64,000 nucleotides of DNA from Ostrea edulis (Eukaryota): NCBI RefSeq assembly GCF_947568905.1, contig NC_079165.1, forward strand, positions 83,700,001-83,764,000. The letters are read 5' to 3'. The notes under the pieces are model-generated. The model searched no databases, was not told the origin of the DNA, and saw nothing but the letters and a program-made list of their open reading frames with translations. Of this stretch, positions 11,761-58,598 are shown in pieces (position 1 is the stretch's first letter; each line of letters begins with the position of its first letter). The position numbers and the translations under genes are program-made.

Positions 11761-13691
11761 CTTAGTATGCCATTAACATTTATGATCAATAAAAAATCTT
11801 AGAAACAAATCTGGAAGACTCTGCGGTGTCTTTTATTTCGAGTTCACTGGGATGTATGTTCTTCTATTTAATTATGAAATCAGTATTTGTAGGATATCAG
11901 TGGTTCATAATGTCACTGTACAATTGATTTTGAAGGCAGAAACTGGAGTGCGCTCACTCTAGGAAATGTTGAGTTTGCGAAAAAGACCACACGAGAAAGG
12001 GCGAAACCACCAGGATGAAGCCAAATATATGATTTATATAGGAAATGAATACTTTTCCGGGGTTGGAATATTCTTATTCATTGACCAATTTCATTGCATT
12101 GAAGGTGAAAATATCGAACATTGATCAATCTCATAACTCCTATATAAGGAATACAAAATAAAGATTTGGGCATCAGGTGTCTAGGAGGAGTAATGATCCC
12201 CCATCGGGTCCAACTCTCAATTTTGTATTCCTTATAGGATTTATGAAATTGAGATTTCATAAAATTGAGTACGTTATCTTCACATTTTCATATCACCAAA
12301 TCTTCTAGAAATGCTTTGGTACACCGGCACATAAAAGCAGACCAGACTTCAACTCTATTCTGGAGAAAAATTTAATCGAGTTTTCATAGGGAAAATCTCT
12401 AACTACTTGTTTCAAAATATTTCCATCAATGATTTAACATTTTAAAGGCCCTGAAAACACAGACAACTAATGCAAAAAAAATAATCTGGCATGACATCCT
12501 GTTGAGCGATGTATGAATAATTAGTAAAAATTCATGAAAGCAAGTATACTATATATAGTTTGTCTTTACCACAGTTATCCCCCTTTTATTTCCTGTAATA
12601 GCTACATCTCTCATAATTCACAAGATTAAAGCTGACATGAATTAATAAATACGTACACCTTTCTCATCTTATCCGCCATATTTCTCTCAGGTAGCCCAAT
12701 TTACTCTACCCGTGAGTGATTTTTCTAGGTGGATTCGACCAGTGCACATCTCCGATAGTAATATATAGGGAATGAGAAACAAATAAAATCACATTTTAAA
12801 ACATTATGCTTTGCTCAAAATTACAAAATATTTATTGTATACCAATGCAACATTCTGGAAGTTTTGATAAGTTAGACAAAAATGCAAAAAAAAAACAACC
12901 AAAAAAACAACAACAAAAAAAAAAAAACCCGGTTTTCTTGCATACTTGCAAGTGCATGCAAGTATTTGCTGTTTCTTATATAATAAATGCGGATAAATCA
13001 TTTGCCAATTACATACTGATAGAATGGAATACACAAAGAGCATAAAATATATTATTTATATCAATTCTTGCAAAATAAAGGTGCATGCCATATGCATAAT
13101 ATGTAATGCGTAAGGTATATTCGCAAAAAAAGCCCCACCAAAAACCCGTATCAAATACGGCCGTCTATTCAACAGGTATCGGAGATGTGCACTTACCGAA
13201 AATATTATATTCTCTTTATTCCGATAAATCCACGAAACAAAATGATAAACTCCATTTGTATCTCGTTAGAACTTTACAACACGTTGTCATTCCATTATAC
13301 AGACTGCGACACACTTCACCCGTGCTTCAATCAGGGGAGATGTCAGAGTCGAAATTTTTTCCTGTATTGAATGCTTGTCTGGTCGAGGTTTTGCAGTTTG
13401 AATATAGAAATGGGGAATCTAATATCTGGTTGGATATATTGCGTGCACAATTCAAAATTTATCGATGATCATATACAAACTTGGATATACAAATAAGGGA
13501 ACAATGATCAAAAATATATATCTGTGTGAAAATGCGCGTATTACATTTGCAATCAACAATAAACAGTTGAATACACAAAGACACATCTAAAAGGAAATGT
13601 ATAAACGAAAATATAGTTTTGTTTTCTCTTTTGCAACCACATGATGAAATTATTTACGGTCTCTGTATGCCCATATTCATTGATTGAACAG

Positions 13692-13708
13692 GAGAGAGAG
13701 AGAGAGAC

Positions 13709-13757
<49 letters not shown>

Positions 13758-13773
13758 AGAGAGATGGAGAGAG
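13692..13773. repeat. (GA)n microsatellite
   Basis: Direct; length varies among units (35676-35772, 57943-58020). Confidence 0.95.
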
Positions 13774-13798
13774 ACCGTCCTACTTCGATGTACAATAT

Positions 13799-14099
13799 CA
13801 GTGGCGGATTTAAGGGGGTGCAGCCGGCGCCCCCCCCCCTTAAAAATTTCAAATTTAAGGTAAATCGTGGTATCTTCTTTAGAAAAATGTACTCAACGAT
13901 AAAAGAAGCAATAATTTCTTCCACTCCCTGAGAAATAAATGACAAAATCTTTTGATTTCTTGAATTACTTTATTGGGAGAACTTAATTTTTTCTAAAAAT
14001 CCTTAAAATTAGCGTCATTTTATTATTTTCACCTCAAGGCGGTTCGCAGACCCCCTGCCTCATAAAGTGGCGCCCCCCGTAACCACAATTCCTGGATCC
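13799..14099 (+). mobile_element. ~300-bp MITE-like element starting CAGTGGCGGAT, 3' TIR truncated
   Basis: Begins CAGTGGCGGATTTAAGGGGG; ends AATTCCTGGATCC without the GCCACTG that would complete the inverted end. Copies start at ~35799 and ~58046. Confidence 0.45.
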
Positions 14100-14462
14100 T
14101 TGAAAATATTATCGCATATCCACGCTTGTCTTGGATATGCGCATTTATCTCCGTAACTGTATCCTCGTCAGTTTTTACTAAAAGGGAAAGGGGGGGGGGA
14201 GAGTTCTTATTTATTCCGGGAAATTTAATTCTGCAATAGTCTAATATATATTGACACGTACACGTCACGTCCTTTCTGGAACATTCTTCCAAACGGCGTG
14301 GTCATCAATTTGGTGCAGCATCAATTCTATCCATATCACTTTAAAATATGCCCAAGACCAAATCAAAAAGGGGGGCACCCAGATCCACGACGTCGGACCA
14401 GTCTCAGCATGCTCAGGCAGTACACACAGGGCAATGCTGACCCCAGCGTAGCACATGGCGGA

Positions 14463-14525
14463 GTCCAGCCACAGATACCTGTCGTCCAGCCACAGATACC
14501 TGTCGTCCAGCCTCAGATACCTGTC
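14463..14525 (+). repeat. 3 x 21-bp coding repeat (VQPQIPV) in the gag N-terminus
   Basis: GTCCAGCC(A/T)CAGATACCTGTC x3. Confidence 0.9.
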
Positions 14526-14690
14526 CTCCATCCCAAAAACCACTTTTAACCCCCACAGCGGGTGCAGCCTGGGGTAGAATTAACGCCAAGTACAGGTAAT
14601 GATATTTTGCACAATGAATTTAATCAGGGCCTACAACCGTTACCTACAATGATCAATTCAAACCAGGCCCCATTGGCATATCATGTTATT

Positions 14691-15703
14691 ATGGAGCGCC
14701 AAATTAACATAAACTCAAATAATTGAAGATATCTTCAATTATTTGAAGATATCATCAATTAAATTATTGCTCACTTTAATTGAATTAATGCGCGCATTAA
14801 ATCAATTATTGCTCTAATCAAATGAATTAATGCGCGCTTCAATTCTATTATTGCTCACATCAATTGAATTAATGCGCGCATCAATTGAATTAATGAGAGC
14901 AATAATTGATTTAATGCGCGCATTAATTCAATTATTGCTCTCTTCAATTCAATTGATGCGCGCATTAATTCAATTAATGAGAGCAATAATAGATTTGATG
15001 CGCGCATTAATTCAATTATTGCTCTCTTCAATGCATTTGATGAGAGCATCAATTTAGTAGAAATATTGCTCGCAATAATTAATTTAGAGCTCGGTTTAAA
15101 TAATTTGATGATCTCTTTAATTCAATTGAAGATATCTTTAAATCATTTACAATGCTTTTGTATAAGGAATTAATGCGCGCATCAATTCTTTTAAAGAGAG
15201 CAACAATTCAATTAAAGATATCATTAATTCAATTGTGGATATGTTGAATTGAAGATATCTTTAATTATATAGTTGCTCTCTCTAAAAGAATTATTGCTCT
15301 CTTCAAATGAATTAAAGATATCATTAATTCAATTGAAGAGAGCAATAATTGAATTAATGCGCGCATCAATTCAATTATTGCTCTCATCAATTGATTTAAT
15401 GCGCGCATTATATCAATTATTGCTCTCTTCAATTGAATTGTAGCGCGCATCAATTCAATTGTTGATATCATTAATTCATTTGAAGAGATCATTAATTCAA
15501 TTGAAGCGCGCATCAATTCAGTTGAAGAATTAATGCTATCATCAATTTAATTAATGCGCGCAGTAATTCAGAATTGAAGATATCATTAATTATTTGAAGA
15601 GATCTTTAATTCAATTGTTGCGCGCATCAAATGAATTAATGATATCTTCAAATAATTGAAGATATCTTCAATTATTTGAGTTTATGTTAATTTGGCGCTC
15701 CAT
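14691..15703. mobile_element. Foldback/MITE element (1013 bp) inserted in gag, copy 1
   Basis: At least 65-bp perfect TIR (ATGGAGCGCCAAATTAACATAAACTCAAATAATTGAAG...); interior of ~21-bp palindromic subrepeats (TTAATGCGCGCATTAA); duplicated flank ATGTTAT (14683-14689 and 15704-15710). Confidence 0.9.
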
Positions 15704-16143
15704 ATGTTATAACCACACTAAACATAAAATAGTCAACGGTGAATTTGTTAATTTAGCCACTTTGCTTGTACGTGACAGCAGTAATTCTCAGATAGCATCT
15801 ATTCTCTCAGTCAACAAATTTGGCCAAATTATTGCATATCCTAAGCAATCAAACAAAATCACTACTATTGAACGCTGGACAGATGCGTTCCTCATATTTA
15901 CTAGCATATATATTGCTGGTCATCCAGAAAAAACACAGCAATTATTAAAGTACGTCCACGACGTTAGACTGGGGGCAGAAAAGTCACAGGGTTGGCCTAA
16001 TTATGACGAGCAGTTTCGCTTGCGCATGGCAACTAATCCGTCTATGGACTGGGGCAGGGTTGATGCAGAGCTTTGGCTCATTTACATGACCCCTTCAAAC
16101 ACCCCATCCCCCCAGCCACCATCAAATCAGTATCTCAAGTGCT

Positions 16144-17974
16144 TTGATTATAATTACAAGGGGTCGTGCCACAAGATTCAGTGTAGATATTTACACCGTT
16201 GCCTTAAGTGTGGCGACAACCATCCGTCAAGTGATTGTGCTAAAACCCAGGCTAAGGCGGGCAAACCAGGGGGACCAAGCAACAATCAGCCCTTTTGGGC
16301 CAATAGCAACCAGTCACAATCCTTTAGCCCAAGCCAAACCAGACAGCAGTCTGGATATATGGGCCCTGGCAAATTCGCCAATAAATACTAGCATAGTTGT
16401 TAGTTATCTCCACACATACCCAGACACTACATCAGCTATTTCTTTTTTTAAAAATGGTCTAATTCGGGGGTTTAGATTGCAGTATTCGGGTCCTCGACTG
16501 CCAATGTTTTGTAGTAATCTTGTATCAGCCACTGAGCACACAGAGGTGTTGCAAGAAAAAATCCATAAAGAGGTGCTTGAAGGACGAATGGCTGGTCCTT
16601 TTGACCACCCCCCATTGCATAATTTACACGTTTCCCCAATAGGTGTCGTTCCGAAGGCAGATGGCGGTTGGCGCATGATCACACATCTTTCTTACCCACC
16701 GTCAAATAGTATAAACCACCATATCGACCCGGTTCACAGATCTGTTAAGTATACCCCATTTGATACTGTAGTCCAAACCATTAGTCTTTTGGGCAAGGGG
16801 ACGTTCATTGCAAAAGTTGATATCAAAAGTGCGTTCAGGTTAATTCGGGTTCATCCAGCTGATTTCGAACTCTTGGGCTTGCATATGAATGGCAGTTTTT
16901 ATATTGATAAGTGTTTACCTTTTGGTTGCGCTATTTCATGCAAAATTTTTGAAATGTTCTCATCATTTTTAGAGTGGTTGGTCATAGCTAAATCAGGGAT
17001 TGAAACGGTTCACCATTACTTGGATGATTTTATTTTTGCAGGCAGTGCGCATACAAGCCATTGTCATGTCCTTATGCATACATTTCAGTCTATGTGTGTC
17101 GAGATGGGAATACCTTTGAACCAGGATAAATCTGTTCAACCCACTACCTGTTTAATATTTCTCGGTCTGGAGATTGATACTATCAAAATGCAAATTAGAA
17201 TACCCCGAGAAAAGGTTGACGAAGTCATGAATCTCCTACTCTTCTGGGTCTCGAAAAATAAAATTAAGTTATCTACCCTTCAGAGCCTGGTGGGCAAGTT
17301 AAATTTTTTTTGGCAAAGCAATACTCGGTAGCAGGGCATTCAACCGTAGATTTTACAACGCCACGATTGGTCCCACTAAGCCATCGCATCATATCAGAAT
17401 CAATCACTCAATGCGTGAAGACATGAATACATGGATAAGTTTTTTGAGGGGATTCAATGGTGTAGTGTATTTCCCAGAGAGGGAGTGGGCCACCCACAAC
17501 ACTTTACAACTGTTCACGGACAGTGCAGGTGGATCTAGTTTAGGTTGCGGGTGTTATTTTCAGGGTCAGTGGACCTACCTTCAATGGCCACATGATTGGA
17601 CCATTACTTCAATCTTGAAAGACATCACATTTTTAGAACTTGTGCCCATTGTGCTAGCCATATCAGTATGGGGCAGTAGGTTGCAAAACAAAAAGATACT
17701 ATTTCATGTGGACAATATGGCCTTAGTACACATTCTTAACAAACAGTCATCTAAGTCACATCGGGTTATGTCGTTTGTTAGGCCACTTATCCTTCAAACA
17801 TTGCACTTCAATATTCAGTTCAAAGCCCAGCATATCCCTGGGAAAACAAATAAAATTGCTGATTCTATATCTCGCAAGCAGTGGGACTTGTTCAGGAACC
17901 TGGCACCTACAGCCGATCACAACCCTCAGCTAATCCCAGCTTCGTTCCAGAGGCTGCTTTGTCAAGTGAAATAA
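16144..17974 (+). pseudogene. pol: Reverse transcriptase / RNase H ORF, split by a +1 frameshift at a T8 run (~17304-17311)
   Basis: VSPIGVVPK, KVDIKSAFR, LPFG, HYLDDF (RT); LFTDSAG, DITFLELVPI, FHVDN, NKIADSISR (RNase H). Removing one T gives the continuous reading KLNFFGKAILGSRAFNRRF...MREDM. Confidence 0.92.
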
Positions 17975-18842
17975 GCCGCCTTTTACACTCATCCTTGTCA
18001 GCAAACACCAACCAAGCATATATGGTGGGTATTCAGGCATTCAACCATTTCCGTAGCATTCAGGGACTACCTAACACATGGCCACCACCGGATGCTCACA
18101 TCAATACATTTATTGCACATTTATCCATACACGGTTACAAGCAATCCACAGCTAAAGCATACATCTCTGCCATTAGTTTTTATTGCAAACTCCACTGGAA
18201 TGCGGATCCGACTAAGCATTTTATAGTGCAGAAATTGTTGCAGGGTATGAAGCGCACAAATTCAATATCGGATGCCCGTTTACCTATCACATTGGGCATT
18301 TTGGAACTAATCATAAATAAACTACAGGTGGTATGCTCTAGCATGTATGAGACCCTTCTTTTTAAAGCATCATTCTCACTAGCTTTTAATGCCTTGCTTA
18401 GGATAGGGGAATTTGCTTTGTCAAAGGGCAATTCTGTGGATCGGGTTTTACATACTGGGGACATTTCCCTGCACACTAACTATTTAACAATTCACATTAG
18501 ATATTCGAAAACTGACCAATTAGGTAGGGCACCACATTGACAGTACATAAGATGACCGGAACTACTTGTCCAATACAGGCCATGCACGATTATATGGAGG
18601 TTAGGGCACCGAAAGCGGGGCCATTATTTTGTCATTACTCTGGTCAGCCTCTTACTCGTTACCAGTTTACCTCAGTTCTGTCACGCTCGCTTAATTTAGC
18701 GGGGATAGACAGTAGGCACTTCAAATCCCACTCGTTTCGCATTGGTGCAGCAACTACACTCGCTCAACAAGGCATGTCAGCCGAAGTTATTCAAGCGGCA
18801 GGTCGATGGAGATCTGTTGCATATCAGTCATATATTCGCTAA
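17881..18842 (+). pseudogene. Tyrosine recombinase, split by a 1-nt deletion near 18526-18540
   Basis: Catalytic motifs LLRIGE, RYSKTDQ, SHSFRIGAAT, AGRWRS and YQSYIR are all present. Adding one G to AGGGC gives DQLGRGTTLTVHK, joining the 17881 and 18537 ORFs. Confidence 0.92.
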
Positions 18843-18857
18843 TCTCTTAACGTTCAT

Positions 18858-19487
18858 ATGCCTTGGGTATTTGCATGCCTAACATTCACCAAGTTCTTCA
18901 TAGGTCCAATTAAAGTGTGGATTGTTGGATCCTCCATTATTAAGAGGGCAGCAGTGGCTGCCAGATCCAGGACAGGGGGACCAAACCTTAACGTTCCAAA
19001 CACGACCATTTGGTGGCAAGGTTACGGGGGTATGAATTTATACGAGTTGGTGCCGAAACTTAAAATATTACAGCAGGTGCAAGATATTCCTGATCTTATC
19101 ATTGTTCATTGTGGGGCAAACAACCTTGGCCGTACCAACCTGTGGTCACTGGTCAGACTTCTTCAGTCTGCTATACTAGAAATAACCAAACGTTTTCCTA
19201 GTGTGAAATTAGTGTGGTCCTCACTGCTACCTAGATTTAGTTGGCGTTATTCTACACAGATACAGGCAATGGAAAACGCCAGAGCAAGAATTAACAGGGA
19301 GGGTATTAGGCTAATAGCTTCAAAGGGTGGGGCGTTCATCAAACACACACAATTTGAAGCTAAGCCCGTTCATCTGTATCATTCTGATGGTGTGCATCTG
19401 TCACAGCTCGGGAATGACTTATTTCTCAATAATCTACAAGGTACCCTTGAAACCTTCATTGGTGGCAGGGTTAATGCGTTTCCTTAG
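18858..19487 (+). CDS. SGNH/GDSL-type hydrolase (209 aa), intact
   Basis: Block I VWIVGSS, block II QGYGG, block III VHCGANN, block V DGVHLS. The true start may be spliced (acceptor at 18903). Confidence 0.85.
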   Translation: MPWVFACLTFTKFFIGPIKVWIVGSSIIKRAAVAARSRTGGPNLNVPNTTIWWQGYGGMNLYELVPKLKILQQVQDIPDLIIVHCGANNLGRTNLWSLVRLLQSAILEITKRFPSVKLVWSSLLPRFSWRYSTQIQAMENARARINREGIRLIASKGGAFIKHTQFEAKPVHLYHSDGVHLSQLGNDLFLNNLQGTLETFIGGRVNAFP

Positions 19488-20362
19488 ACCTGTTTCGATT
19501 TGCGGCAATCTGGTTAGCGGTGACCATTTGAATTGGCGTACTGCCGCCGTCACCACGGTTCTGGGCACTCCCTTTGTGGCGGTTGCAGTCCCACAAACGC
19601 TCCTGTTTCACGGGCGTGTGTGGCACGTGCAAGTGGCGTTTCGGCGCACCCCAACTCAAATGGAGGAGTGCACCCAATATTCTGCAGCTTCATGCCATGA
19701 ACTTGAAAATTTGCAGTATTGATTGATGATTGAATTGATGATTGAATGATGGAATTGTTGACATTGAATTGTCGGACTATTGATTGATTGATTTAATATC
19801 TTAATTCTTGTATTATTGATTGATTTATTGTATTTGCATTTGGTGACGTTGTGCACTTGCGTTTACCCAGTGCGCAATTCGCCCATCTGGGGCCGTCACA
19901 TTTGATTGATTGATTGATTGTTGAGGGGGCGGCTCTGTGGTAGCCCCCAACCATCACCGCGGCCAAGAGCGCCAAAACAAATAAATACCGTTCATTATTA
20001 TAGTGGTTGTACAGTGTTATTTTTGGACAGGAATCGGTGATAAAAAATATATATACTCATGCTCATCATTATACATACATGTAATCACCTTGTACCTTAT
20101 TGGAGAAGGCTTATATAGGCTGCAAGCCTGCTGCCTAATCCATTTATGCTTCATACATATTATTTGCATTACAAAATAACAAAAAAGAATATTGTTATTA
20201 AAGGTGGGGGAAAGACACTCTTGTCCCCTCCCCTTGATTCTATGTGTTTGATAACGACGCATAATATGATAAACTCGATTATTACATTTGCATTAGTACA
20301 ATTTGCATCGAGTTCAACGCAGAATGTAATAACGCAAAATGGCATAGATATATATAAGATCT

Positions 20363-20560
20363 ATTGAGCGCCAAATTAGCATAAAATGAAGTAATCGAAA
20401 ATAACATTATTAAAAGATATGCTTAATTTTTAATTATTGTGTGTTTTAAATGAATCAAACAAATCTGTATTATCAATTGATGAGAGCAATATTGAGTTAC
20501 TAGTACTGTTCTCTTTTAATGAATTAACGATATCATTTGTCTTAATAAGAGCGCGATTAT
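20363..20560. mobile_element. Degraded one-ended remnant of the same foldback family
   Basis: ATTGAGCGCCAAATTAGCATAAA resembles the TIR; TCAATTGATGAGAGCAATA resembles the subrepeat. Also present at ~42413-42610. Confidence 0.55.
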
Positions 20561-20568
20561 TACAAGGT

Positions 20569-20572
<4 letters not shown>

Positions 20573-20613
<41 letters not shown>
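20573..20613. repeat. (CT)n microsatellite
   Basis: Direct; copy at 42623-42672. Confidence 0.95.
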
Positions 20614-20616
<3 letters not shown>

Positions 20617-20815
20617 CCATACACTCGTACAGTGTTGTATATGCAAATTATATATGCATAAACAATTTCTGTACCTAAATGATTTCCTGATTTATAAATC
20701 TGCAATACTCTGACCAGTAAATCATATGGTATAAGGATTCATGCACAATACAGGGTAAATATTCTACTCTGATACTTCCCCTGATTGAAGATAGCTGATC
20801 GGCACGGGCTAAGTG

Positions 20816-21136
20816 CAAGGTGAAGATAACGAACAGTGATCAATCTCATAATTCCTACAAGCAATACAAAATAGATAGTTGGGCAAACACGGACCCCTGG
20901 ACACACCAGAGGTGGGATCAGGTGCCTAGGAGGAGTAAGCATCCCCTGTTGACCGGTCAAACCCGCCGTGAGCACCATATCCCGATCAGGTAAACGGAGT
21001 TAGCCGCAGTCAAATTCAGTGTGCCAAGAACGGCTTAACAATCAGTATGAAACACGTCAGACAGCATTTGACCCAATGCGAGGTTGTATTGACGAACTAG
21101 ATCGTTATAACGACCATAGAATTTGCGAAATGCTGA
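20816..21136 (-). mobile_element. 321-bp Penelope-like 3' fragment with 7-bp TSD, inside the right arm of the TTAA element
   Basis: CTAAGTG at 20809-20815 and 21137-21143; copy at 42878-43198. Confidence 0.85.
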
Positions 21137-24100
21137 CTAAGTGTGTCGCAGGCTGTACAATGGTATTTACTGTTGGAATGCAAATGGAGTTTATCGTTTT
21201 GTTTCATGGATTATGCAAATAACGGGAGTTTTACTACTACTTAGAGTATTTTCGACAAGTGTACACGTACATTTGCGGTCCTTTACAGATATTACGAGTA
21301 GACCCAGGTAAATAGTCGTCCGCATTCGATGCGTTTTCATGGCGAGCATACATGTCATGTTTATAAGTACAAAATTACTTATTTATTTGCCTTTTACTTG
21401 AAGTAATTGTGAATGGAATAGATTGTATACCCTTTGCTTATTCCATTGTATCAATAGATAATAGATGAAATATTTCTCCGCGTTTTTGTATAGTTTTGAC
21501 ATATTTACTGCAAATGTACCCACACTCACGTAAAGAAAAGGCATTCTATATATATTTATCCAAAGCTTTTAAAATGATTTACTATTGTACGATATGTTTA
21601 TTATAATTTTGAGCACTGCGTGGTGTTCCAAAACGTGATTTCATTTCTTCTTGATGTCCTGTAAATTAGTATCGGAAATGTACGTGTTACCTGTCGAAGC
21701 TATCCGTACAGGTAAATCGAAGACACTGATGTGAAGTGAAGCGTAGCAAAACTCGTCCCCTTATATACCATGCGAACCCTGATACATATAACAATAGAAT
21801 ATCCAACTAATATGGCGGATTAGCAGAGAAATATGTCGGACATATAAAATTATACTATATTTATTAATTCATGTCAGCTTTAATCACTTGTATTTGTTCA
21901 GAAGATGACATTGTTTAATGATTGACCAATGTAGTTTTTTGTATTTAGATGCATTGTTTGTTGAAAGGTGAAGATAACGAACAGTGATCAATCTCATAAC
22001 TCCTATAAACGATATAAAATAGATAGTCGGGCAAACACGGACCCCTGGACACACCAGAGGTAGGAAAAGGCGCCTACGAGGAGTAAGCATCCCCTGTTGA
22101 CTGGTCACACCCACCTTGATTCCTATCGTTATAACGACCATAGCATTTGCGAAAAGCTGATTTTTAACGAGACTGTTGAATCCCCTGTACCATCAACTTG
22201 TTTGTCAGTAGCTTGTCTCGATTTAAAAACTGACCATACGCAGAACAATCCCTTGCGCATCGAATCAGTTGAGAGATATAAACACCATATGCAGGTGATC
22301 ATGAATATTGCTACATAAATATGGTAAGTTGACGATGGAGAAGCTACAAGCATCCCGTTTGTTATAAAGTTGAGTTGTTAGTTTGCCGTTAATATCTACT
22401 TTCAATAAGATATGTATCAATGTATCTTAGCTTTCGGGTTTCGATAAATCAGCATGCACAGTCGACAATTCAATATTTAGTGTCTTTTGGAAATGTACTT
22501 TATTACAAAATCTAACATTCATACAGACATCAGCGATTTTTTTTCTCGCGTTTTCCTATATATTTGACTTTATATCCACAGAGTGGATCCGACACTACTA
22601 GGTAACGTGTAATATTGGTTTGAAAAACTACCATAATGCCCTATCCTTTTTAGCTGTCACAATGGTTACCGGTTCTTTTACAAAGTCTTCTAAATGAAGT
22701 GCAATATATCAATTGAAACGAGTTTTTATACATTGAGGAATACAACATCATTATATTATAATAACTGTACAAAAAGGAAAACATTTGAAAATGCGAAAAT
22801 AAGAGTTTCAATCATTTGGTCAAAGTTTCGGGATGTGGATAAATCTTCGTCGTTTCCAGTCCTACAAAACAAAACATCACAGATAATAACGACAAAACAA
22901 AACATCACAGATAATAACGACAAAAACATGTTTAATAATCTATGTTTGACACTTTATCTGCGAAGTCATCTTCGCAAGCCTAGTGTCTGATTCGCTTTCC
23001 CTCATCTCCCCTGAGAGTAAGCGAATCGGACACTTGGCTTGTGAAGTTCCTGCATAGCATGCACTGAACATCTAATAAAACTTGAATCATTCCTTTTTAT
23101 TCCTATCATTTTTGATTTACAAAAAACTATTGATGATACATAGCGTTTATAATGCAATTTCATCATACTTTTATTTTGGACTTGGCATTCGTCTACTGAT
23201 CACGATTCTCGTCCTTTGAAGTCCCAGGCGTCATTTCTGTTTTGTTCGTGAAATACTATGACTACAAATAGACAGAGTAATTGGAATTTCATATAAAGAT
23301 GTCTCCTCCATGTATGTTCTGCAAGGCAATCTCAAATATATCGTGTATAATGAACCCAAGAGTTCGAATTGTCTTCTAGAAAACAGGAAACATTTTCCTA
23401 GTCAGGGAATAGAATGAGCACAAAATAAAGATAAAGTGATCATTCATAGGTGGGATCAGGTGCCTAGGAGGAGGAAGTATCCCCTATCGACCAGTTACAC
23501 CCGCCGTAAGCCCTATATGTTTATCAGGTAAAAAGAGTTATTCGTAGCCAAATCAGTGTGCCAAGAACGGCCTTACAATCGGTATGAAACACGTCAGACA
23601 GCATTTAACTCAACGACCGTAGAATCTGCGAAATACTGACTTTAAACGAGACTGCTAAAAACCTTACAACATTTTCGGAGGAACGTTTTATTACAGAGTA
23701 TAAGTTGATTCGTAATCGAATCATTGCACGAGAAGGAAGTGTATCCTCTGGATTACTGATATATAGGCTTATAGGGGTATAGTAGATTTATTGCAGTTAT
23801 TTAAATTAAGCTAACCGAGACCATGGACGTTGGATGTTGTGATTATTGGGAATTCCACTTCAAATATCAAGTGTACTGTAGAATTTTAACCTGAACAATC
23901 GAAACATACAACTTCATTTTTATGGAATAAGTGGGTGAATGATCAGACTGAAAAGGGGAAGAAAACGAACAGTGATCCATCTCATAACTCCTATAAAAAT
24001 ACAAAATTAACAGTAGGGCCATCATGGACCCTTGGATATACCAGAGGTGGAATCAGGTGCCTATGTGTAGTATACATCCTCTACCGACTGGTCACACCCA

Positions 24101-32571: not shown

Positions 32572-35500
32572 AGCGAAGATAACGAAGAGTGATCAATCTC
32601 TTAACTCCCACAAAGAACAGACGTCTCCATATGAGTGAAAATTCTCAATAGAAACGTTAAACAATATACAACCAACCAACTTACAAGGAATGCAAAAGGA
32701 AGAGTTTGTAAACACGGACCCCTGGATGTACCAGAGATGGGATCAGGTGCCTAGGAGGAGTAAGCATCCTCTATCGACCAGTCAGACCCGCAATGGGCCT
32801 TAATACTTTATCGGGTAAACGCAGTATTCCCTAGTTAAAATCAGTGTGTAAAGAACGGCCTAACAATTGGCATGAAACACGTCAGGTTGCCCTACTCTTA
32901 ATTTTGTATTCTTTATAGGTTATTGTTCACTATATGTCAGTAGATTGACATATTTATGACTATATACTATAGGTGTTAATTATGTTTTGATGGCAATTAT
33001 ATCTGGATTTAGCACAGGATGAAACTGTGATACAATCAACTGAAAGTTCACTGAAGGTGTGGGGAGGTGTCTGATAGAATGGCATAATTTCTTCCCGTGT
33101 TCATCCATGGTACAGCAGAATTTACTTAACATTATTCTAAGCCAAAAAGGTTTGGAAATATCAAATTCTATCTGGTCAGTAAATAGGATGCATGGTGATT
33201 AATTGTTATGATGCTGAATTGCTATGATTAAAAGGCGCAGAAAACGTAGTGACCAATATCATAACTCCTATAAAGAATACAAAATAAGTGTGGGACCAAC
33301 ATGGAACCCAGGACATACCTGAGGTGGGATCAGGTGCCTAGAAAATGTAAGCATCCACCGTCGACCGTGTAATACTACTTTTTGAACCTCGTTTAAGAAA
33401 CACGTCAGACAGCTCTAGAACCAATGACAATTTTCAATGGCAAACTAGACCGTTGCAACGACTATAGAATTCGCTAAATGTTGATTTTAAATGAAACTGT
33501 TTAAACTCCTGTACCATCAACTTCTTTGTCAGTTGGCTGCCTCGATTTAGAAACTGGTTATACTCAGAACACCCTCGTGTGTATCGAATGAGTCGAAGGA
33601 CATAAAACCACATGTAGGTGATTATGGAATATTGCGACATAAATATGGAAAGTTGATGTTAGAGAAATTTAACTCACCCCGATTGTCATATTGTTGAGTT
33701 CTTAGTATGCCATTAACATTTATGATCAATAAAAAATCTTAGAAACAAATCTGGAAGACTCTGCGGTGTCTTTTATTTCGAGTTCACTGGGATGTATGTT
33801 CTTCTATTTAATTATGAAATAAGTATTTGTAGGATATCAGTGGTTCATAATGTCACTGTACAATTGATTTTGAAGGCAGAAACTGGAGTGCGCTCACTCT
33901 AGGAAATGTTGAGTTTACGAAAAAGACCACACGAGAAAGGGCGAAACCACCAGGATGAAGCCAAATATATGATTTATATAGGAAATGAATACTTTTCCGG
34001 GGTTGGAATATTCTTATTCATTGACCAATTTCATTGCATTGAAGGTGAAAATATCGAACATTGATCAATCTCATAACTCCTATATAAGAAATACAAAATA
34101 AAGATTTGGGCATCAGGTGTCTAGGAGGAGTAATGATCCCCCATCGAGTCCAACTCTCAATTTTGTATTCCTTATAGGATTTATGAAATTGAGATTTCAT
34201 AAAATTGAGTACGTTATCTTCACATTTTCATATCACCAAATCTTCTAGAAATGCTTTGGTACACCGGCACATAAAAGCAGACCAGACTTCAACTCTATTC
34301 TGGAGAAAAATTTAATCGAGTTTTCATAGGGAAAATCTCTAACTACTTGTTTCAAAATATTTCCATCAATGATTTAACATTTTAAAGGCCCTGAAAACAC
34401 AGACAACTAATGCAAAAAAAAAATCTGACATGACATCCTGTTGAGCGATGTATGAATAATTAGTAAAAATTCATGAAAGCAAGTATACTACATGTAGTTT
34501 GTCTTTACCACAGTTATCCCCCTTTTATTTCCTGTAATAGCTACGTCTCTCATAATTCACAAGATTAAAGCTGACATGAATTAATAAATACGTACACCTT
34601 TCTCATCTTATCCGCCATATTTCTCTCAGGTAGCCCAATTTACTCTACCCGTATATACCCCAAATGTGATTCTCACACCTGAGTGATTTTTCTAGGTGGA
34701 TTCGACCAGTGCACATCTCCGATAGTAATATATAGGGAATGAGAAACAAATAAAATCACATTTTAAAACATTATGCTTTGCTCAAAATTACAAAATATTT
34801 ATTGTATACCAATGCAACATTCTGGAAGTTTTGATAAGTTAGACAAAAATGCAAAAAAAAAACAACCAAAAAAACAACAACAACCAAAAACCCCGGTTTT
34901 CTTGCATACTTGCAAGTGCATGCAAGTATTTGCTGTTTCTTATATAATAAATGCGGATAAATCATTTGCCAATTACATACTGATAGAATGGAATACACAA
35001 AGAGCATAAAATATATTATTTATATCAATTCTTGCAAAATAAAGGTGCATGCCATATGCATAATATGTAATGCGTAAGGTATATTCGCAAAAAAAAAAAC
35101 CCACCAAAAACCCGTATCAAATACGGCCGTCTATTCAACAGGTATCGGAGATGTGCACTTACCGAAAATATTATATTCTCTTTATTCCGATAAATCCACG
35201 AAACAAAATGATAAACTCCATTTGTATCTCGTTAGAACTTTACAACACGTTGTCATTCCATTATACAGACTGCGACACACTTCACCCGTGCCAAACAGGA
35301 TGTCTTCAATCAGGGGAGATGTCAGAGTCGAAATTTTTTCCTGTATTGAATGCTTGTCTGGTCGAGGTTTTGCAGTTTGAATATAGAAATGGGGAATCTA
35401 ATATCTGGTTGGATATATTGCGTGCACAATTCAAAATTTATCGATGATCATATACAAACTTGGATATACAAATAAGGGAACAATGATCAAAAATATATAT

Positions 35501-35673
35501 CTGTGTGAAAATGCGTGTATTACATTTGCAATCAACAATAAACAGTTGAATACACAAAGACACATCTAAAAGGAAATGTATAAACGAAAATATAGTTTTG
35601 TTTTCTCTTTTGGAACCACATGATAAAATTATTTACGGTACGGTCTCTGTATGCCCATATTCATTGATTGAAC

Positions 35674-35757
<84 letters not shown>

Positions 35758-36348
35758 AGAGAGATGGAGAGAGACCGTCCTACTTCGATGTACAATATCA
35801 GTGGCGGATTTAAGGAGGTGCAGCCGGCGCCCCCCCCCCCCCCCTAAAAATTTCAAATTTAAGGTAAATCGTGGTATCTTCTTTAGAAAAATGTACTCAA
35901 CGATAAAAGAAGCAATAATTTCTTCCACTCCCTGAGAAATAAATGACAAAATCTTTTGATTTCTTGAATTACTTTATTGGGAGAACTTAATTTTTTCTAA
36001 AAATCCTTAAAATTAGCGTCATTTTATTATTTTCACCTCAAGGCGGTTCGCAGACCCCCTGCCTCATAAAGTGGCGCCCCCCGTAACCACAATTCCTGGA
36101 TCCTTGAAAATATTATCGCATATCCACACTTGTCTTGGATATGCGCATTTATCTCCGTAACTGTATCCTCGTCAGTTTTTACTAAAAGGGAAAGGGGGGG
36201 GGGGTTCTTATTTATTCCGGGAAATTTAATTCTGCAATAGTCTAATATATATTGACACGTACACGTCACGTCCTTTCTGGAACATTCTTCCAAACGGCGT
36301 GGTCATCAATTTGGTGCAGCATCAATTCTATCCATATCACTTTAAAAT

Positions 36349-38458
36349 ATGCCCAAGACCAAATCAAAAAGGGGGGCACCCAGATCCACGACGTCGGACC
36401 AGTCTCAACATGCTCAGGCAGTACAGACAGGGCGTAATCGCAGGACACGGAGAAGCAATGCTGACCCCAGCGTAGCACATGGCGGAGTCCAGCCACAGAT
36501 ACCTGTCGTCCAGCCACAGATACCTGTCGTCCAGCCTCAGATACCTGTCCTCCATCCCAAAAACCACTTTTAACCCCCACAGCGGGTGCAGCCTGGGGTA
36601 GAATTAACGCCAAGTACAGGTAATGATATTTTGCACAATGAATTTAATCAGGGCCTACAACCGTTACCTACAATGATCAATTCAAACCAGGCCCCATTGG
36701 CATATCATGTTATTATGGAGCGCCAAATTAACATAAACTCAAATAATTGAAGATATCTTCAATTATTTGAAGATATCATCAATTAAATTATTGCTCACTT
36801 TAATTGAATTAATGCGCGCATTAAATCAATTATTGCTCTAATCAAATGAATTAATGCGCGCTTCAATTCTATTATTGCTCACATCAATTGAATTAATGCG
36901 CGCATCAATTGAATTAATGAGAGCAATAATTGATTTAATGCGCGCATTAATTCAATTATTGCTCTCTTCAATTCAATTGATGCGCGCATTAATTCAATTA
37001 ATGAGAGCAATAATAGATTTGATGCGCGCATTAATTCAATTATTGCTCTCTTCAATGCATTTGATGAGAGCATCAATTTAGTAGAAATATTGCTCGCAAT
37101 AATTAATTTAGAGCTCGGTTTAAATAATTTGATGATCTCTTTAATTCAATTGAAGATATCTTTAAATCATTTACAATGCTTTTGTATAAGGAATTAATGC
37201 GCGCATCAATTCTTTTAAAGAGAGCAACAATTCAATTAAAGATATCATTAATTCAATTGTGGATATGTTGAATTGAAGATATCTTTAATTATATAGTTGC
37301 TCTCTCTAAAAGAATTATTGCTCTCTTCAAATGAATTAAAGATATCATTAATTCAATTGAAGAGAGCAATAATTGAATTAATGCGCGCATTAAATCAATT
37401 ATTGCTCTCATCAAATGAATTAATGCGCGCATCAATTCAATTATTGCTCTCATCAATTGATTTAATGCGCGCATTATATCAATTATTGCTCTCTTCAATT
37501 GAATTGTAGCGCGCATCAATTCAATTGTTGATATCATTAATTCATTTGAAGAGATCATTAATTCGATTGAAGCGCGCATCAATTCAGTTGAAGAATTAAT
37601 GCTATCATCAATTTAATTAATGCGCGCAGTAATTCAGAATTGAAGATATCATTAATTATTTGAAGAGATCTTTAATTCAATTGTTGCGCGCATCAAATGA
37701 ATTAATGATATCTTCAAATAATTGAAGATATCTTCAATTATTTGAGTTTATGTTAATTTGGCGCTCCATATGTTATAACCACACTAAACATAAAATAGTC
37801 AACGGTGAATTTGTTAATTTAGCCACTTTGCTTGTACGTGACAGCAGTAATTCTCAGATAACATCTATTCTCTCAGTCAACAAATTTGGCCAAATTATTG
37901 CATATCCTAAGCAATCAAACAAAATCACTACTATTGAACGCTGGACAGATGCGTTCCTCAAATTTACTAGCATATATATTGCTGCTCATCCAGAAAAAAA
38001 CACAGCAATTATTAAAGTACGTCCACGACGTTAGACTGGGGGCAGAAAAGTCACAGGGTTGGCCTAATTATGACGAGCAGTTTCGCTTGCGCATGGCAAC
38101 TAATCCGTCTATGGACTGGGGCAGGGTTGATGCAGAGCTTTGGCTCATTTACATGACCCCTTCAAACACCCCATCCCCCCAGCCACCATCAAATCAGTAT
38201 CTCAAGTGCTTTGATTATAATTACAAGGGGTCGTGCCACAAGATTCAGTGTAGATATTTACACCGTTGCCTTAAGTGTGGCGACAACCATCCGTCAAGTG
38301 ATTGTGCTAAAACCCAGGCTAAGGCGGGCAAACCAGGGGGACCAAGCAACAATCAGCCCTTTTGGGCCAATAGCAACCAGTCACAATCCTTTAGCCCAAG
38401 CCAAACCAGACAGCAGTCTGGATATATGGGCCCTGGCAAATTCGCCAATAAATACTAG
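36349..38458 (+). pseudogene. gag: Gag-like ORF1, copy 2 (TAA at 36571, foldback insertion, extra A in an A-run near 37994-38000)
   Basis: ORF-track pieces 36349-36573, 37750-38034 and 37886-38458. Confidence 0.85.
36715..37769. mobile_element. Foldback element, copy 2 (1055 bp)
   Basis: Same TIR and flanks; +42 bp of subrepeats relative to copy 1. Confidence 0.9.
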
Positions 38459-40042
38459 CATAGTTGTTAGTTATCTCCACACATACCCAGACACTACATC
38501 AGCTATTTCTTTAAAAAAAAAATGGTCTAATTCGGGGGTTTAGATTGCAGTATTCGGGTCCTCGACTGCCAATGTTTTGTAGTAATCTTGTATCAGCCAC
38601 TGAGCACACAGAGGTGTTGCAAGAAAAAATCCATAAAGAGGTGCTTGAAGGGCGAATGGCTGGTCCTTTTGACCACCCCCCATTGCATGATTTACACGTT
38701 TCCCCAATAGGTGTCGTTCCGAAGGCAGATGGCGGTTGGCGCATGATCACACATCTTTCTTACCCACCGTCAAATAGTATAAACCACCATATCGACCCGG
38801 TTCACAGATCTGTTAAGTATACCTCATTTGATACTGTAGTCCAAACCATTAGTCTTCTGGGCAAGGGGACGTTCATTGCAAAAGTTGATATCAAAAGTGC
38901 GTTCAGGTTAATTCGGGTTCATCCAGCTGATTTCGAACTCTTGGGCTTGCATATGAATGGCAGTTTTTATATTGATGAGTGTTTACCTTTTGGTTGCGCT
39001 ATTTCATGCAAAAGTTTTGAAATGTTCTCATCATTTTTAGAGTGGTTGGTCATAGCTAAATCAGGGATTGAAACGGTTCACCATTACTTGGATGATTTTA
39101 TTTTTGCAGGCAGTGCGCATACAAGCCATTGTCATGTCCTTATGCATACATTTCAGTCTACGTGTGTCGAGATGGGAATACCTTTGAACCAGGATAAATC
39201 TGTTCAACCCACTACCTGTTTAATATTTCTCGGTCTGGAGATTGATACTATCAAAATGCAAATTAGAATACCCCGAGAAAAGGTTGACGAAGTCATGAAT
39301 CTCCTACTCTTCTGGGTCTCGAAAAATAAAATTAAGTTATCTACCCTTCAGAGCCTGGTGGGCAAGTTAAATTTTTTTTGGCAAAGCAATACTCGGTAGC
39401 AGGGCATTCAACCGTAGATTTTACAACGCCACGATTGGTCCCACTAAGCCATCGCATCATATCAGAATCAATCACTCAATGCGTGAAGACATGAATACAT
39501 GGATAAGTTTTTTGAGGGGATTCAATGGTGTAGTGTATTTCCCAGAGAGGGAGTGGGCCACCCACAACACTTTACAACTGTTCACGGACTGTGCAGGTGG
39601 ATCTAGTTTAGGTTGCGGGTGTTATTTTCAGGGTCAGTGGACCTACCTTCAATGGCCACATGATTGGACCATTACTTCAATCTTGAAAGACATCACATTT
39701 TTAGAACTTGTGCCCATTGTACTAGCCATATCAGTATGGGGCAGTAGGTTGCAAAACAAAAAGATACTATTTCATGTGGACAATATGGCCTTAGTACACA
39801 TTCTTAACAAACAGTCATCTAAGTCACATCGGGTTATGTCGTTTGTTAGGCCACTTATCCTTCAAACATTGCACTTCAATATTCAGTTCAAAGCCCAGCA
39901 TATCCCTGGGAAAACAAATAAAATTGCTGATTCTATATCTCGCAAGCAGTGGGACTTGTTCAGGAACCTGGCACCTACAGCCGATCACAACCCTCAGCTA
40001 ATCCCAGCTTCGTTCCAGAGGCTGCTTTGTCAAGTGAAATAA
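38211..40042 (+). pseudogene. pol: RT/RNase H, copy 2 (two frameshifts)
   Basis: Breaks at the T3A10 tract (~38510-38522) and at the T8 run (~39372-39379); YLDD retained. Confidence 0.9.
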
Positions 40043-40892
40043 GCCGCCTTTTACACTCATCCTTGTCAGCAAACACCAACCAAGCATATATGGTGGGTAT
40101 TCAGGCATTCAACCATTTCCGTAGCATTCAGGGACTACCTAACACATGGCCACCACCGGATGCTCACATCAATACATTTATTGCACATTTATCCATACAC
40201 GGTTACAAGCAATCCACAGCTAAAGCATACATTTCTGCCATTAGTTTTTATTGCAAACTCCACTGGAATGCGGATCCGACTAAGCATTTTATAGTGCAGA
40301 AATTGTTGCAGGGTATGAAGCGCACAAATTCAATATCGGATGCCCGTTTACCTATCACATTGGGCATTTTGGAACTAATCATAAATAAACTACAGGTGGT
40401 ATGCTCCAGCATGTATGAGACCCTTCTTTTTAAAGCATCATTCTCACTAGCTTTTAATGCCTTGCTTAGGATAGGGGAATTTGCTTTGTCAAAGGGCAAT
40501 TCTGTGGATCGGGTTTTACATACTGGGGACTATTTAACAATTCACATTAGATATTCGAAAACTGACCAATTAGGTAGGGCACCACATTGACAGTACATAA
40601 GATGACCGGAACTACTTGTCCAATACAGGCCATGCACGATTATATGGAGGTTAGGGCACCGAAAGCGGGGCCATTATTTTGTCATTACTCTGGTCAGCCT
40701 CTTACTCGTTACCAGTTTACCTCAGTTTTGTCACGCTCGCTTAATTTAGCGGGGATAGACAGTAGGCACTTCAAATCCCACTCGTTTCGCATTGGTGCAG
40801 CAACTACACTCGCTCAACAAGGCATGTCAGCCGAAGTTATTCAAGCGGCAGGTCGATGGAGATCTGTTGCATATCAGTCATATATTCGCTAA
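39949..40892 (+). pseudogene. Tyrosine recombinase, copy 2 (shared frameshift plus 18-bp in-frame deletion of ISLHTN)
   Basis: The first ORF piece is 213 aa versus 219 aa in the other copies; same catalytic motifs. Confidence 0.9.
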
Positions 40893-40907
40893 TCTCTTAA
40901 CGTTCAT

Positions 40908-42618: not shown

Positions 42619-42675
<57 letters not shown>

Positions 42676-57800: not shown

Positions 57801-57941
57801 CAACAATAAACAGTTGAATACACAAAGACACATCTAAAAGGAAATGTATAAACGAAAATATAGTTTTGTTTTCTCTTTTGGAACCACATGATAAAATTAT
57901 TTACGGTACGGTCTCTGTATGCCCATATTCATTGATTGAAC

Positions 57942-57995
<54 letters not shown>

Positions 57996-58598
57996 AGAGA
58001 AAAGAGAGAGATGGAGAGAGACCGTCCTACTTCGATGTACAATATCAGTGGCGGATTTAAGGGGGTGCAGCCGGCGCCCCTCCCCCCCCCCCTAAAAATT
58101 TCAAATTTAAGGTAAATCGTGGTATCTTCTTTAGAAAAATGTACTCAACGATAAAAGAAGCAATAATTTCTTCCACTCCTTGAGAAATAAATGACAAAAT
58201 CTTTTGATTTCTTGAATTACTTTATTGGGAGAACTTAATTTTTTCTAAAAATCCTTAAAATTAGCGTCATTTTATTATTTTCACCTCAAGGCGGTTCGCA
58301 GACCCCCTGCCTCATAAAGTGGCGCCCCCCGTAACCACAATTCCTGGATCCTTGAAAATATTATCGCATATCCACGCTTGTCTTGGATATGCGCATTTAT
58401 CTCCGTAACTGTATCCTCGTCAGTTTTTACTAAAAGGGAAAGGGGGGGGGGGGTTTCTTATTTATTCCGGGAAATTTAATTCTGCAATAGTCTAATATAT
58501 ATTGACACGTACACGTCACGTCCTTTCTGGAACATTCTTCCAAACGCCGTGGTCATCAATTTGGTGCAGCATCAATTCTATCCATATCACTTTAAAAT

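What the first reader, a model, noticed from the sequence alone, without database searches (positions are those of the whole stretch)
12630..21879. Element ends are ~1.1-kb diverged inverted arms, like a composite transposon
Seen: beyond the 22-bp TIR, the left arm (12630-~13775) matches the reverse complement of the right arm (~20570-21879) in ordered blocks. Examples: CTCCCCTGATTGAAGA (rc of ~13325-13340) vs 20777-20791; CAAATGGAGTTTATC (rc of 13247-13261) vs 21181-21195; the translated remnants NADKSFANYILIEWNTQRA vs NAEKYFIYYLLIQWNKQRV; and (GA)n at 13692 mirrored by (CT)n at 20573. The arms are clearly diverged while the tips are identical. Inference: either ancient very long TIRs with selection only on the tips, or two related ~1-kb elements in inverted orientation that mobilised the ~7 kb between them.
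Basis: partly seen in the sequence, partly recalled or inferred. Interest (0 to 1): 0.7.

Follow-up and report, generated by a model that had tools for sequence, protein, structure and literature searches.

The report
Foldback-type transposon carrying a nested retrotransposon
The roughly 1-kb inverted arms are real, but they are best read as the long, diverged terminal repeats of one non-coding cut-and-paste DNA transposon in a bivalve-like genome, and the "7 kb between them" is a broken tyrosine-recombinase retrotransposon that landed inside it, so this is ordinary nested junk DNA and not a composite transposon.

Summary
Observation confirmed. Left arm 12630-13775 and the reverse complement of right arm 20573-21879 align collinearly: score 417 against 83±10 for shuffles, 78% identity in aligned columns, many indels. 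The 22-bp tips are identical, occur only at the outer ends, and abut TTAA.

Interpretation partly supported. Neither arm has an inner terminal repeat, so two complete elements are not supported.

TTAA flanks with AG...CT termini fit the published Kolobok signature and not piggyBac. No transposase is present. Best reading: a non-autonomous, foldback-like element with long diverged arms constrained only near the tips.

The interior, 13776-20572, is a defective Ngaro-like retrotransposon: gag-like ORF, RT, RNase H, tyrosine recombinase, GDSL hydrolase. It is itself interrupted by a 1015-bp palindromic module.

The whole arrangement sits in a ~22-kb unit repeated about 2.9 times in tandem.

Superfamily assignment and order of events are therefore inferred from one locus.

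Low interest: a new member of known kinds.

The parts
12626..12629 (.). TTAA flank on the left (putative target-site duplication)
   Evidence: Read directly. The same flank is present in unit copies 2 and 3.
12630..12651 (+). Left 22-bp terminal inverted repeat. It begins with AG.
   Evidence: Exact match to the reverse complement of 21858-21879. There are only five occurrences in the window, all at outer tips, against 0 expected by chance.
12630..13775 (+). Left arm: 1062 bp of unique sequence plus (GA)42 at 13692-13774
   Evidence: Collinear homology to the reverse complement of the right arm. Microsatellite found by TRF. No Pfam hit for its ORFs.
13776..14347 (+). 572 bp between (GA)n and the ORF1 start. 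Either the 5' region of the retrotransposon, the middle domain of the outer element, or part of each. Unresolved.
   Evidence: Unique in the window. No Pfam hit. No direct repeat shared with the 3' region.
14348..14689 (+). N-terminal part of the retrotransposon's gag-like ORF1. It is broken by a frame change near 14430 and an in-frame stop at 14547-14549.
   Evidence: The MPKTK start matches the N-terminus of oyster relatives. The homology of P0121-P0130 runs up to 14687.
14690..15704 (.). 1015-bp palindromic module made of 21-bp tandem repeats, inserted into ORF1. It is flanked by direct TGTTAT at 14684-14689 and 15705-15710.
   Evidence: Inverted repeats I9 and I16. TRF arrays. Flanking 6-bp repeat in all three copies. 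ORF1 homology stops at 14687 and resumes at 15711.
15711..16391 (+). Conserved C-terminal part of the gag-like ORF1, with a Cys/His knuckle
   Evidence: 50-58% identity to Saccostrea and other relatives.
16144..17331 (+). Reverse transcriptase ORF
   Evidence: Pfam RVT_1, E 2e-15. 1225 relatives, with the named ones from Mytilus, Pecten and Saccostrea.
17411..17974 (+). RNase H part. In relatives it lies in the same ORF as the RT; here it is in a different frame, so there is a break between 17331 and 17411.
   Evidence: 44% identity to residues 405-578 of the L013 RT-RH ORF. The RT piece matches residues 55-370 of that same ORF. Weak Pfam RVT_3 hit.
17881..18842 (+). Tyrosine recombinase, split into two frames near 18530-18555
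   Evidence: Pfam Phage_int_SAM_1 and Phage_integrase. The two pieces match residues 12-224 and 236-330 of the single L013 recombinase ORF.
18858..19487 (+). GDSL/SGNH-type hydrolase ORF
   Evidence: Pfam Lipase_GDSL_2, E 1.2e-7, 32.8 bits against a cut-off of 32.9. The same ORF follows the recombinase in relatives L013 and L003.
19488..20572 (+). 3' non-coding region. It includes a diverged partial copy of the module terminus at 20362-20560.
   Evidence: 20362-20458 matches 14690-14788 at 73%. 20362-20428 matches the reverse complement of 15634-15704 at 77%.
20573..21879 (-). Right arm: (CT)20 at 20573-20613, then 20614-21879. About 979 bp without its insert.
20816..21136 (+). 321-bp interspersed repeat inserted into the right arm. 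It is flanked by CTAAGTG at 20809-20815 and 21137-21143.
   Evidence: Many copies in both orientations across the unit. Alignment with other copies. Flanks read. The left arm is uninterrupted at the matching site.
21858..21879 (-). Right 22-bp terminal inverted repeat. It ends with CT.
21880..21883 (.). TTAA flank on the right
   Evidence: Read directly.
34569..43941 (+). Second copy of the whole element, in the next 22-kb unit
56831..64000 (+). Third copy, cut off by the end of the window

Best explanation
The outer structure (12630-21879) is one non-autonomous, foldback-like cut-and-paste DNA transposon. It has exact 22-bp terminal inverted repeats and arms of about 1 kb that are homologous but about 22% diverged. 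It encodes no transposase.

Its ends carry the published Kolobok signature: a TTAA target with termini 5'-AG...CT-3'. It would therefore be moved in trans by a Kolobok-type DDE transposase that recognises the tips and perhaps the better-conserved first ~60-80 bases. The rest of each arm drifts freely.

After, or less likely before, its last move its central part received a Ngaro-like tyrosine-recombinase retrotransposon. That retrotransposon is now defective. It was in turn hit by a 1-kb palindromic 21-bp-repeat module. Separately, the right arm received a 321-bp interspersed repeat. Finally the surrounding ~22-kb segment was amplified in tandem.

Shown directly: arm homology, exact tips, TTAA flanks, AG/CT termini, absence of inner terminal repeats, the identity and breaks of the inner retrotransposon, both nested insertions with their flanking duplications, and the tandem copies.

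Inferred: the superfamily, mobilisation in trans, the order of events, and that the arms arose by elongation or duplication of a terminal repeat.
For: - Arms are homologous and collinear, far above shuffles and above the wrong orientations.
- The tips are exact and found only at the outer ends. TTAA lies on both sides.
- Published criteria: Kolobok makes TTAA duplications and has 5'-RR...YY-3' termini, unlike piggyBac (PMC9587614). All full-length Xenopus Kolobok copies have TTAA plus AG termini, and one family's repeat contains the same CTGACATG core (PMC6004289). Among molluscs, Kolobok is found almost exclusively in bivalves (PMC10294476).
- No ORF in the arms or the 5' segment hits Pfam.
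- The interior has gag-like, RT, RNase H, recombinase and GDSL ORFs in the Ngaro order. Relatives L013 and L003 have the same architecture.
- Relatives at 39-44% RT identity (L013, L015, L022) carry direct repeats, not inverted ones, spaced 5.56-5.77 kb. That matches the 5776 bp left here once the module is removed.
- The foldback form is known to arise in different superfamilies by loss of the transposase and elongation of the terminal repeats (PMC4079207).
Against: - Only one locus is available; the three tandem copies are not independent.
- No second family member, solo arm or empty site was found in metagenome, viral or prokaryote-genome contigs, or in the 84 fetched loci.
- Because TTAA is a palindrome, the flanks only extend the inverted repeat, and no duplication event was observed.
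- The retrotransposon, with the module nested in it, fills all the space between the two mirrored microsatellites. Either it inserted in a short middle domain or the arms belong to it.
- This copy shows no split direct repeats of its own, so its true ends are not defined.
- No recurrent subterminal motifs were found.
- A short direct repeat at an insertion can also be the crossover core of a tyrosine recombinase, so TTAA alone does not prove a DDE transposase.
Confidence: 0.6

Rival explanations
1. The arms are the retrotransposon's own very long inverted terminal repeats. That would make the whole 9.25 kb one tyrosine-recombinase element of a new DIRS-like layout, with TTAA as the recombination core.
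For: The coding unit and its untranslated regions occupy the entire space between the arms. This copy has no split direct repeats of its own. Distant relatives L071 and L073 (32% RT identity) have imperfect 80-nt inverted repeats, 80% complementary, 5.8 kb apart. Tyrosine-recombinase integration also leaves a short direct repeat.
Against: There is no internal complementary region: the tips have no interior match above shuffle level. There is no room for a methyltransferase domain, because the RNase H ORF overlaps the recombinase ORF. The closer relatives with the same ORF set have direct repeats and total lengths of about 5.7-5.9 kb. Exact 22-bp tips with AG...CT next to TTAA are the published Kolobok signature.
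Confidence: 0.12
2. It is a composite. Two related ~1-kb non-autonomous elements inserted in inverted orientation now move together using their outer ends, carrying the retrotransposon as cargo.
For: The arms are diverged as two subfamily members would be, while the outer tips are identical. Composite-like Kolobok elements, though with direct repeats, are known and common in bivalves (PMC9587614).
Against: No inner terminal repeats or inner TTAA junctions exist: the best match near the inner ends is 13/22. Both arms end in the same mirrored microsatellite. No solo arm was found anywhere that could be searched.
Confidence: 0.08
3. It is a non-mobile inverted segmental duplication of host DNA around the retrotransposon, for example from palindrome-forming repair. 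The tip identity would then be chance or local gene conversion.
For: The locus lies in a rearrangement-prone ~22-kb tandem array rich in repeats.
Against: The homology stops exactly at a perfect 22-bp inverted repeat bounded by TTAA. The best-conserved part is the extreme end, which neutral decay does not predict.
Confidence: 0.05

Closest known systems
Non-autonomous Kolobok-superfamily transposons, such as the Xenopus T2-MITE/XKol families
   Same: TTAA at both flanks, termini AG...CT, short exact terminal inverted repeats, no transposase, and a host group (bivalves) in which Kolobok is common.
   Different: Described T2-type MITEs are short. Here the arms are about 1 kb and mutually homologous. 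No autonomous partner or other family member was available to confirm the assignment.
Foldback-like transposons (FB, Galileo, Tetris)
   Same: Long inverted arms make up almost the whole element, with little or no middle domain and no coding capacity. This form can arise in different superfamilies by loss of the transposase and elongation of the terminal repeats.
   Different: Classical foldback arms are built from tandem subrepeats and are usually very similar to each other. Here the only internal repeat is a (GA)n tract, and the arms are about 22% diverged with many indels.
KolobokP composite-like elements of bivalves
   Same: Kolobok-type ends, long terminal repeats of several hundred bp, and a tendency to occur in tandem multimers.
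   Different: KolobokP repeats are direct and each has its own short terminal inverted repeats. The interior encodes a transposase and a His-Me nuclease. None of that is found here.
Ngaro-like tyrosine-recombinase retrotransposons (the inner element)
   Same: The ORF order is gag-like, RT/RNase H, tyrosine recombinase, then an SGNH/GDSL hydrolase. There is no methyltransferase domain.
   Different: This copy has no detectable split direct repeats. It carries at least four reading-frame breaks and a 1-kb insertion in ORF1.
piggyBac
   Same: TTAA flanks.
   Different: The termini are AG...CT, the feature that the literature uses to separate Kolobok from piggyBac. There is no transposase.

Membership tests
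Kolobok superfamily (non-autonomous member) | TTAA target-site duplication | tested here: met
   TTAA lies at 12626-12629 and 21880-21883. The duplication itself is not proven, because no empty site was available.
Kolobok superfamily (non-autonomous member) | Termini 5'-RR...YY-3' | tested here: met
   The element begins with AG and ends with CT. The criterion comes from PMC9587614 and PMC6004289.
Kolobok superfamily (non-autonomous member) | Sequence relation of the ends to an autonomous element encoding a Kolobok DDE transposase | not testable with these tools
   No transposase lies in the element or elsewhere in the 22-kb unit.
piggyBac | Termini unlike RR...YY. From my own knowledge they are typically CC...GG next to the TTAA. 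| tested here: not met
   The termini here are AG...CT. The distinction is stated in PMC9587614.
Composite transposon (two complete elements flanking cargo) | Each arm is a complete element with terminal repeats at both of its ends | tested here: not met
   The best interior match to the 22-bp tip is 16/22, equal to the shuffle level, and 13/22 near the inner ends.
Composite transposon (two complete elements flanking cargo) | Solo arms occur elsewhere as independent insertions | not testable with these tools
   None is present in the window or in the searchable collections. Those collections do not hold the source genome.
Foldback-like transposons (structural class) | Long inverted arms forming most of a non-coding element | tested here: met
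   The arms are 1146 bp and about 979 bp. With the nested elements removed, at most a few hundred bp remain between them.
Ngaro-like retrotransposon (inner element) | RT/RNase H plus tyrosine recombinase, without a methyltransferase domain | tested here: met
   Pfam RVT_1, Phage_int_SAM_1 and Phage_integrase. The RNase H ORF overlaps the start of the recombinase ORF, which leaves no room for another domain.
Ngaro-like retrotransposon (inner element) | SGNH/GDSL hydrolase ORF after the recombinase | tested here: inconclusive
   Lipase_GDSL_2 at E 1.2e-7, but 32.8 bits against a curated cut-off of 32.9. The equivalent ORF is present in L013 and L003, also below the cut-off.
Ngaro-like retrotransposon (inner element) | Split direct repeats (A1 ... 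B1 A2 B2) | tested here: not met
   No direct repeat is shared between 13776-14430 and 19440-20575. The one apparent pair (14690 and 20362) belongs to the inserted palindromic module. Relatives L013, L015 and L022 do have such repeats.
DIRS1-like retrotransposon (arms read as its inverted terminal repeats) | An internal complementary region matching the outer ends of the terminal repeats | tested here: not met
   There is no interior match to the tips above chance. The criterion comes from PMC9210276.

The most novel reading that the evidence does not exclude
The retrotransposon and the inverted arms may form one functional unit. One version is a tyrosine-recombinase retrotransposon with kilobase-long inverted terminal repeats that integrates at TTAA. 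The other is a retrotransposon that integrates at the symmetry centre of a long DNA palindrome, where an extruded cruciform resembles the four-way junction that tyrosine recombinases act on. A related observation is that the 1-kb palindromic module inside ORF1 is flanked by a 6-bp repeat and shares its terminus with the retrotransposon's own 3' region. It could therefore be a recombinase-mobilised derivative of that element.
Probability: 0.1. Interest if true: 0.6.

Novelty: new member of a known kind. Interest (0 to 1): 0.25.

Why it matters
As it stands this is an annotation result. A 9.25-kb block that looked like a eukaryotic composite transposon resolves into four nested mobile elements of known kinds.

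It has two practical uses:
- It is a clean example of a long-armed, TTAA-targeting element whose arms have drifted while the tips stayed exact. That bears on how much of a long terminal repeat a transposase actually needs.
- It is a caution for automated repeat annotation in bivalve genomes, where nested foldback structures and retrotransposons can mimic composite elements.

If other copies showed the retrotransposon always sitting between such arms, it would become a new architecture for tyrosine-recombinase elements.

Tried and rejected
- Ribosomal DNA or another structured RNA as the GC-richer 7 kb: no Rfam match at gathering score anywhere in the window.
- My first reading of 14690-15704 and 20362-20560 as the retrotransposon's split direct repeats A1/A2. 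The 5672-nt spacing resembled the relatives'. I dropped this once the 14690-15704 block proved to be an insertion, with TGTTAT on both sides and ORF1 homology continuing across it.
- The 914 bp at 13776-14689 as a middle domain only. Its right part is the broken N-terminus of ORF1. The status of 13776-14347 stays open.
- Searches for other family members. The 22-mer and a TTAA+16-mer gave 0 hits in metagenome, viral and prokaryote-genome contigs and in the fetched loci. Arm ORFs are absent from the protein collection and have no relatives by word search. A literature text search for the tip returned only unrelated primers.
- Recurrent subterminal motifs as candidate transposase-binding sites: none found at k=7-9.
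- A microsatellite target preference for the retrotransposon: relatives show no consistent (GA)n or (CT)n next to them.
- Two retroposons lying tail to tail with (GA)n tails: no flanking duplications around the single arms (read).
The contigs of the 97-99% identical RT fragments P0001 and P0004 and of the Saccostrea relatives could not be examined.
- The large representative-protein search and structure prediction were not used, because nothing in the question depended on them.
- Broken ORFs were searched piece by piece and never joined.

Full report
**Context**

The window is eukaryotic, about 35% G+C, and has no structured RNA at Rfam gathering score. It consists of a unit of about 22 kb repeated head to tail about 2.9 times. 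Matching points are spaced 21.8-22.3 kb apart, and over the element and its near flanks the copies are 98.4-99.5% identical, excluding length changes in simple repeats.

The element under study therefore occurs three times: 12630-21879, 34569-43941, and from 56831 to the window end. These are duplicates of one insertion, not independent copies.

The encoded proteins have their closest named relatives in bivalves (Saccostrea, Pecten, Mytilus). The source is probably a bivalve. It is not human. One run of N (54691-54840) was left untouched.

**Check of the observation**

The left arm and the reverse complement of the right arm share ordered blocks with E-values down to 1e-11.

- A global alignment of 12630-13691 with the reverse complement of the right arm, insert removed, scores 417.
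- Shuffles give 83±10, and the two wrong orientations give 78 and 98.
- There are 572 matches and 159 mismatches, with many indels.
- Homology runs from the tips to about 13500 on the left and to 20614 on the right.
- A left-only stretch of about 190 bp follows, then the mirrored (GA)42 and (CT)20.

It has many copies in both orientations across the unit. It is flanked by a 7-bp direct repeat at 20809-20815 and 21137-21143, and the left arm is uninterrupted at the matching site. So it is a later insertion.

The 22-bp tip is exact and is found only at the outer ends. At 78% identity, a perfect 22-base run at a fixed position has probability of about 0.004. The next ~30 aligned bases are also better conserved than the rest, despite a 19-bp indel. 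The ends have therefore been under constraint that the arms have not.

**What the arms are**

Neither arm has an inner copy of the terminal repeat. The best interior match is 16 of 22, the same as in shuffles, and only 13 of 22 near the inner ends. Two complete elements in inverted orientation are therefore not supported.

The element is bounded by TTAA on both sides, and its termini are AG...CT. The literature separates the two TTAA-targeting superfamilies by exactly this:

- Kolobok has 5'-RR...YY-3' termini and piggyBac does not (PMC9587614).
- All full-length Xenopus Kolobok copies have TTAA plus AG termini, and one family's terminal repeat shares the CTGACATG core seen here (PMC6004289). 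That similarity is short and is only a lead.
- Among molluscs, Kolobok is found almost exclusively in bivalves (PMC10294476).

No transposase is encoded in the element or anywhere else in the 22-kb unit. With the nested elements removed, the arms (1146 bp and about 979 bp) make up nearly the whole element. That is the foldback form, which is thought to arise in different superfamilies by loss of the transposase and elongation of the terminal repeats (PMC4079207).

From memory, some Sola families also favour 4-bp AT-rich targets. I could not verify this in the papers I opened, so it remains a caveat.

**What lies between the arms**

The ORFs give reverse transcriptase (Pfam RVT_1), an RNase H-like part, a tyrosine recombinase (Phage_int_SAM_1 and Phage_integrase), and a GDSL-type hydrolase just below the Pfam cut-off at 32.8 against 32.9 bits. 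Upstream is a gag-like ORF with a Cys/His knuckle.

This order, with no room for a methyltransferase domain, is the published Ngaro-like layout (PMC9210276). It is shared by relatives recovered from metagenome contigs: L013 and L003 have a single RT-RNase H ORF, a single recombinase ORF of 331-348 residues, and a GDSL ORF.

Against those relatives, the copy in the window is broken in several places:

- between RT and RNase H (17331-17411);
- inside the recombinase (near 18530-18555);
- in ORF1, by a frame change near 14430 and an in-frame stop at 14547-14549.

I searched the pieces separately and did not join them.

**A correction made during the work**

I first took the 1015-bp palindromic block of 21-bp repeats at 14690-15704, together with a related 200 bp at 20362-20560, as the retrotransposon's split direct repeats. 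Their spacing (5672 nt) resembled that of the direct repeats in L013, L015 and L022 (5558-5773 nt).

This reading was wrong. The block is flanked by the same 6 bp on both sides in all three copies. In eight of ten ORF1 relatives, homology runs up to 14687 and resumes at or just after 15711, with about one residue missing at the junction. The block is therefore a further insertion inside ORF1, and the retrotransposon continues to the left. Its ORF1 start, matching the relatives' N-terminus, is at 14348.

Without the block and one copy of its flank, the interval between the two microsatellites is 5776 bp. That is the size of the relatives' units.

This copy has no detectable split direct repeats of its own. 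Its exact ends are therefore unknown, and the status of 13776-14347 and of 20362-20572 is open: retrotransposon ends, or middle domain of the outer element.

**Relation between the arms and the retrotransposon**

The simplest reading is nesting: the retrotransposon landed in the short middle part of a foldback-like DNA transposon.

Because the retrotransposon, with the module nested in it, occupies the whole space between the arms, I took seriously the rival that the arms are its own inverted terminal repeats. Against that rival:

- there is no internal complementary region;
- the closer relatives with the same ORF set have direct repeats, not inverted ones, and are about 5.7-5.9 kb long;
- the Kolobok-type ends argue the other way.

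In its favour, distant relatives (32% RT identity) do have imperfect 80-nt inverted repeats 5.8 kb apart, and tyrosine-recombinase integration can also leave a short flanking repeat. I give this rival about 0.12.

**What could not be done**

- Exact searches with the tip found nothing in metagenome, viral or prokaryote-genome contigs or in the 84 fetched loci.
- Arm ORFs are not in the protein collection and have no relatives by word search.

These blanks say little, because the collections do not hold the source genome.

**Verdict**

The 'ancient long terminal repeats with constraint on the tips' alternative is supported. The 'composite transposon that mobilised 7 kb' alternative is not.

The block is a stack of known kinds of mobile element:

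- a Kolobok-type foldback-like non-autonomous transposon;
- a defective Ngaro-like retrotransposon;
- a palindromic repeat module;
- a short interspersed repeat.

All of these sit inside a ~22-kb tandem array. This is a new member of known kinds and of low interest, unless other copies show the arms and the retrotransposon always travelling together.

Noticed in passing
window 1-64000: The whole window is a ~22-kb unit repeated in tandem about 2.9 times. Over the element and its near flanks the copies are 98.4-99.5% identical, and they differ mainly in the lengths of micro- and minisatellites. The ends of the array lie outside the window. Whether it is a real macrosatellite or an assembly expansion was not tested.
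   Followed up: partly
window 14690-15704 (also 36714-37770 and 58964-59936): A 1015-bp near-palindromic module built of 21-bp tandem repeats, with ~120-nt inverted ends and a 6-bp flanking repeat (TGTTAT), is inserted in ORF1 of the retrotransposon. A diverged partial copy of its terminus lies in the retrotransposon's 3' region at 20362-20560. It may derive from the retrotransposon's own terminal sequence.
   Followed up: partly
window 20816-21136, and for example 140-297, 1593-1821, 4862-4997, 5364-5504, 8460-8618, 21962-22119: A ~320-bp interspersed repeat family has a dozen or more full or partial copies per 22-kb unit, in both orientations. The copy in the right arm has a 7-bp flanking duplication. 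The family was not identified.
   Followed up: partly
window 6739-7500 (and the matching positions in the other units): A 21-bp minisatellite of about 37 copies, with a unit unrelated to the 21-bp repeats inside the element. Its copy number differs between the tandem units.
   Followed up: no
window 13810-13843: Two TTAA sites enclose 26 bp that start with a G run and end with a C run. This might be a relic or footprint of another TTAA-targeting element, or chance low-complexity sequence.
   Followed up: no
loci L081, L082, L084; protein P0150: Relatives of this animal retrotransposon sit in contigs deposited as bacterial MAGs (Sedimenticola, Nitrospirales, Candidatus Thiodiazotropha). This most likely reflects host or eukaryote DNA binned into those MAGs.
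   Followed up: no
L071 6454-12427; L073 3120-9082: Distant relatives (32% RT identity) are bounded by imperfect 80-nt inverted repeats about 5.8 kb apart, which is a DIRS1-like layout. Relatives L013, L015 and L022 (39-44% RT identity) have direct repeats spaced 5.56-5.77 kb.
   Followed up: partly
window 54691-54840: A run of 150 N in the third unit.
   Followed up: no
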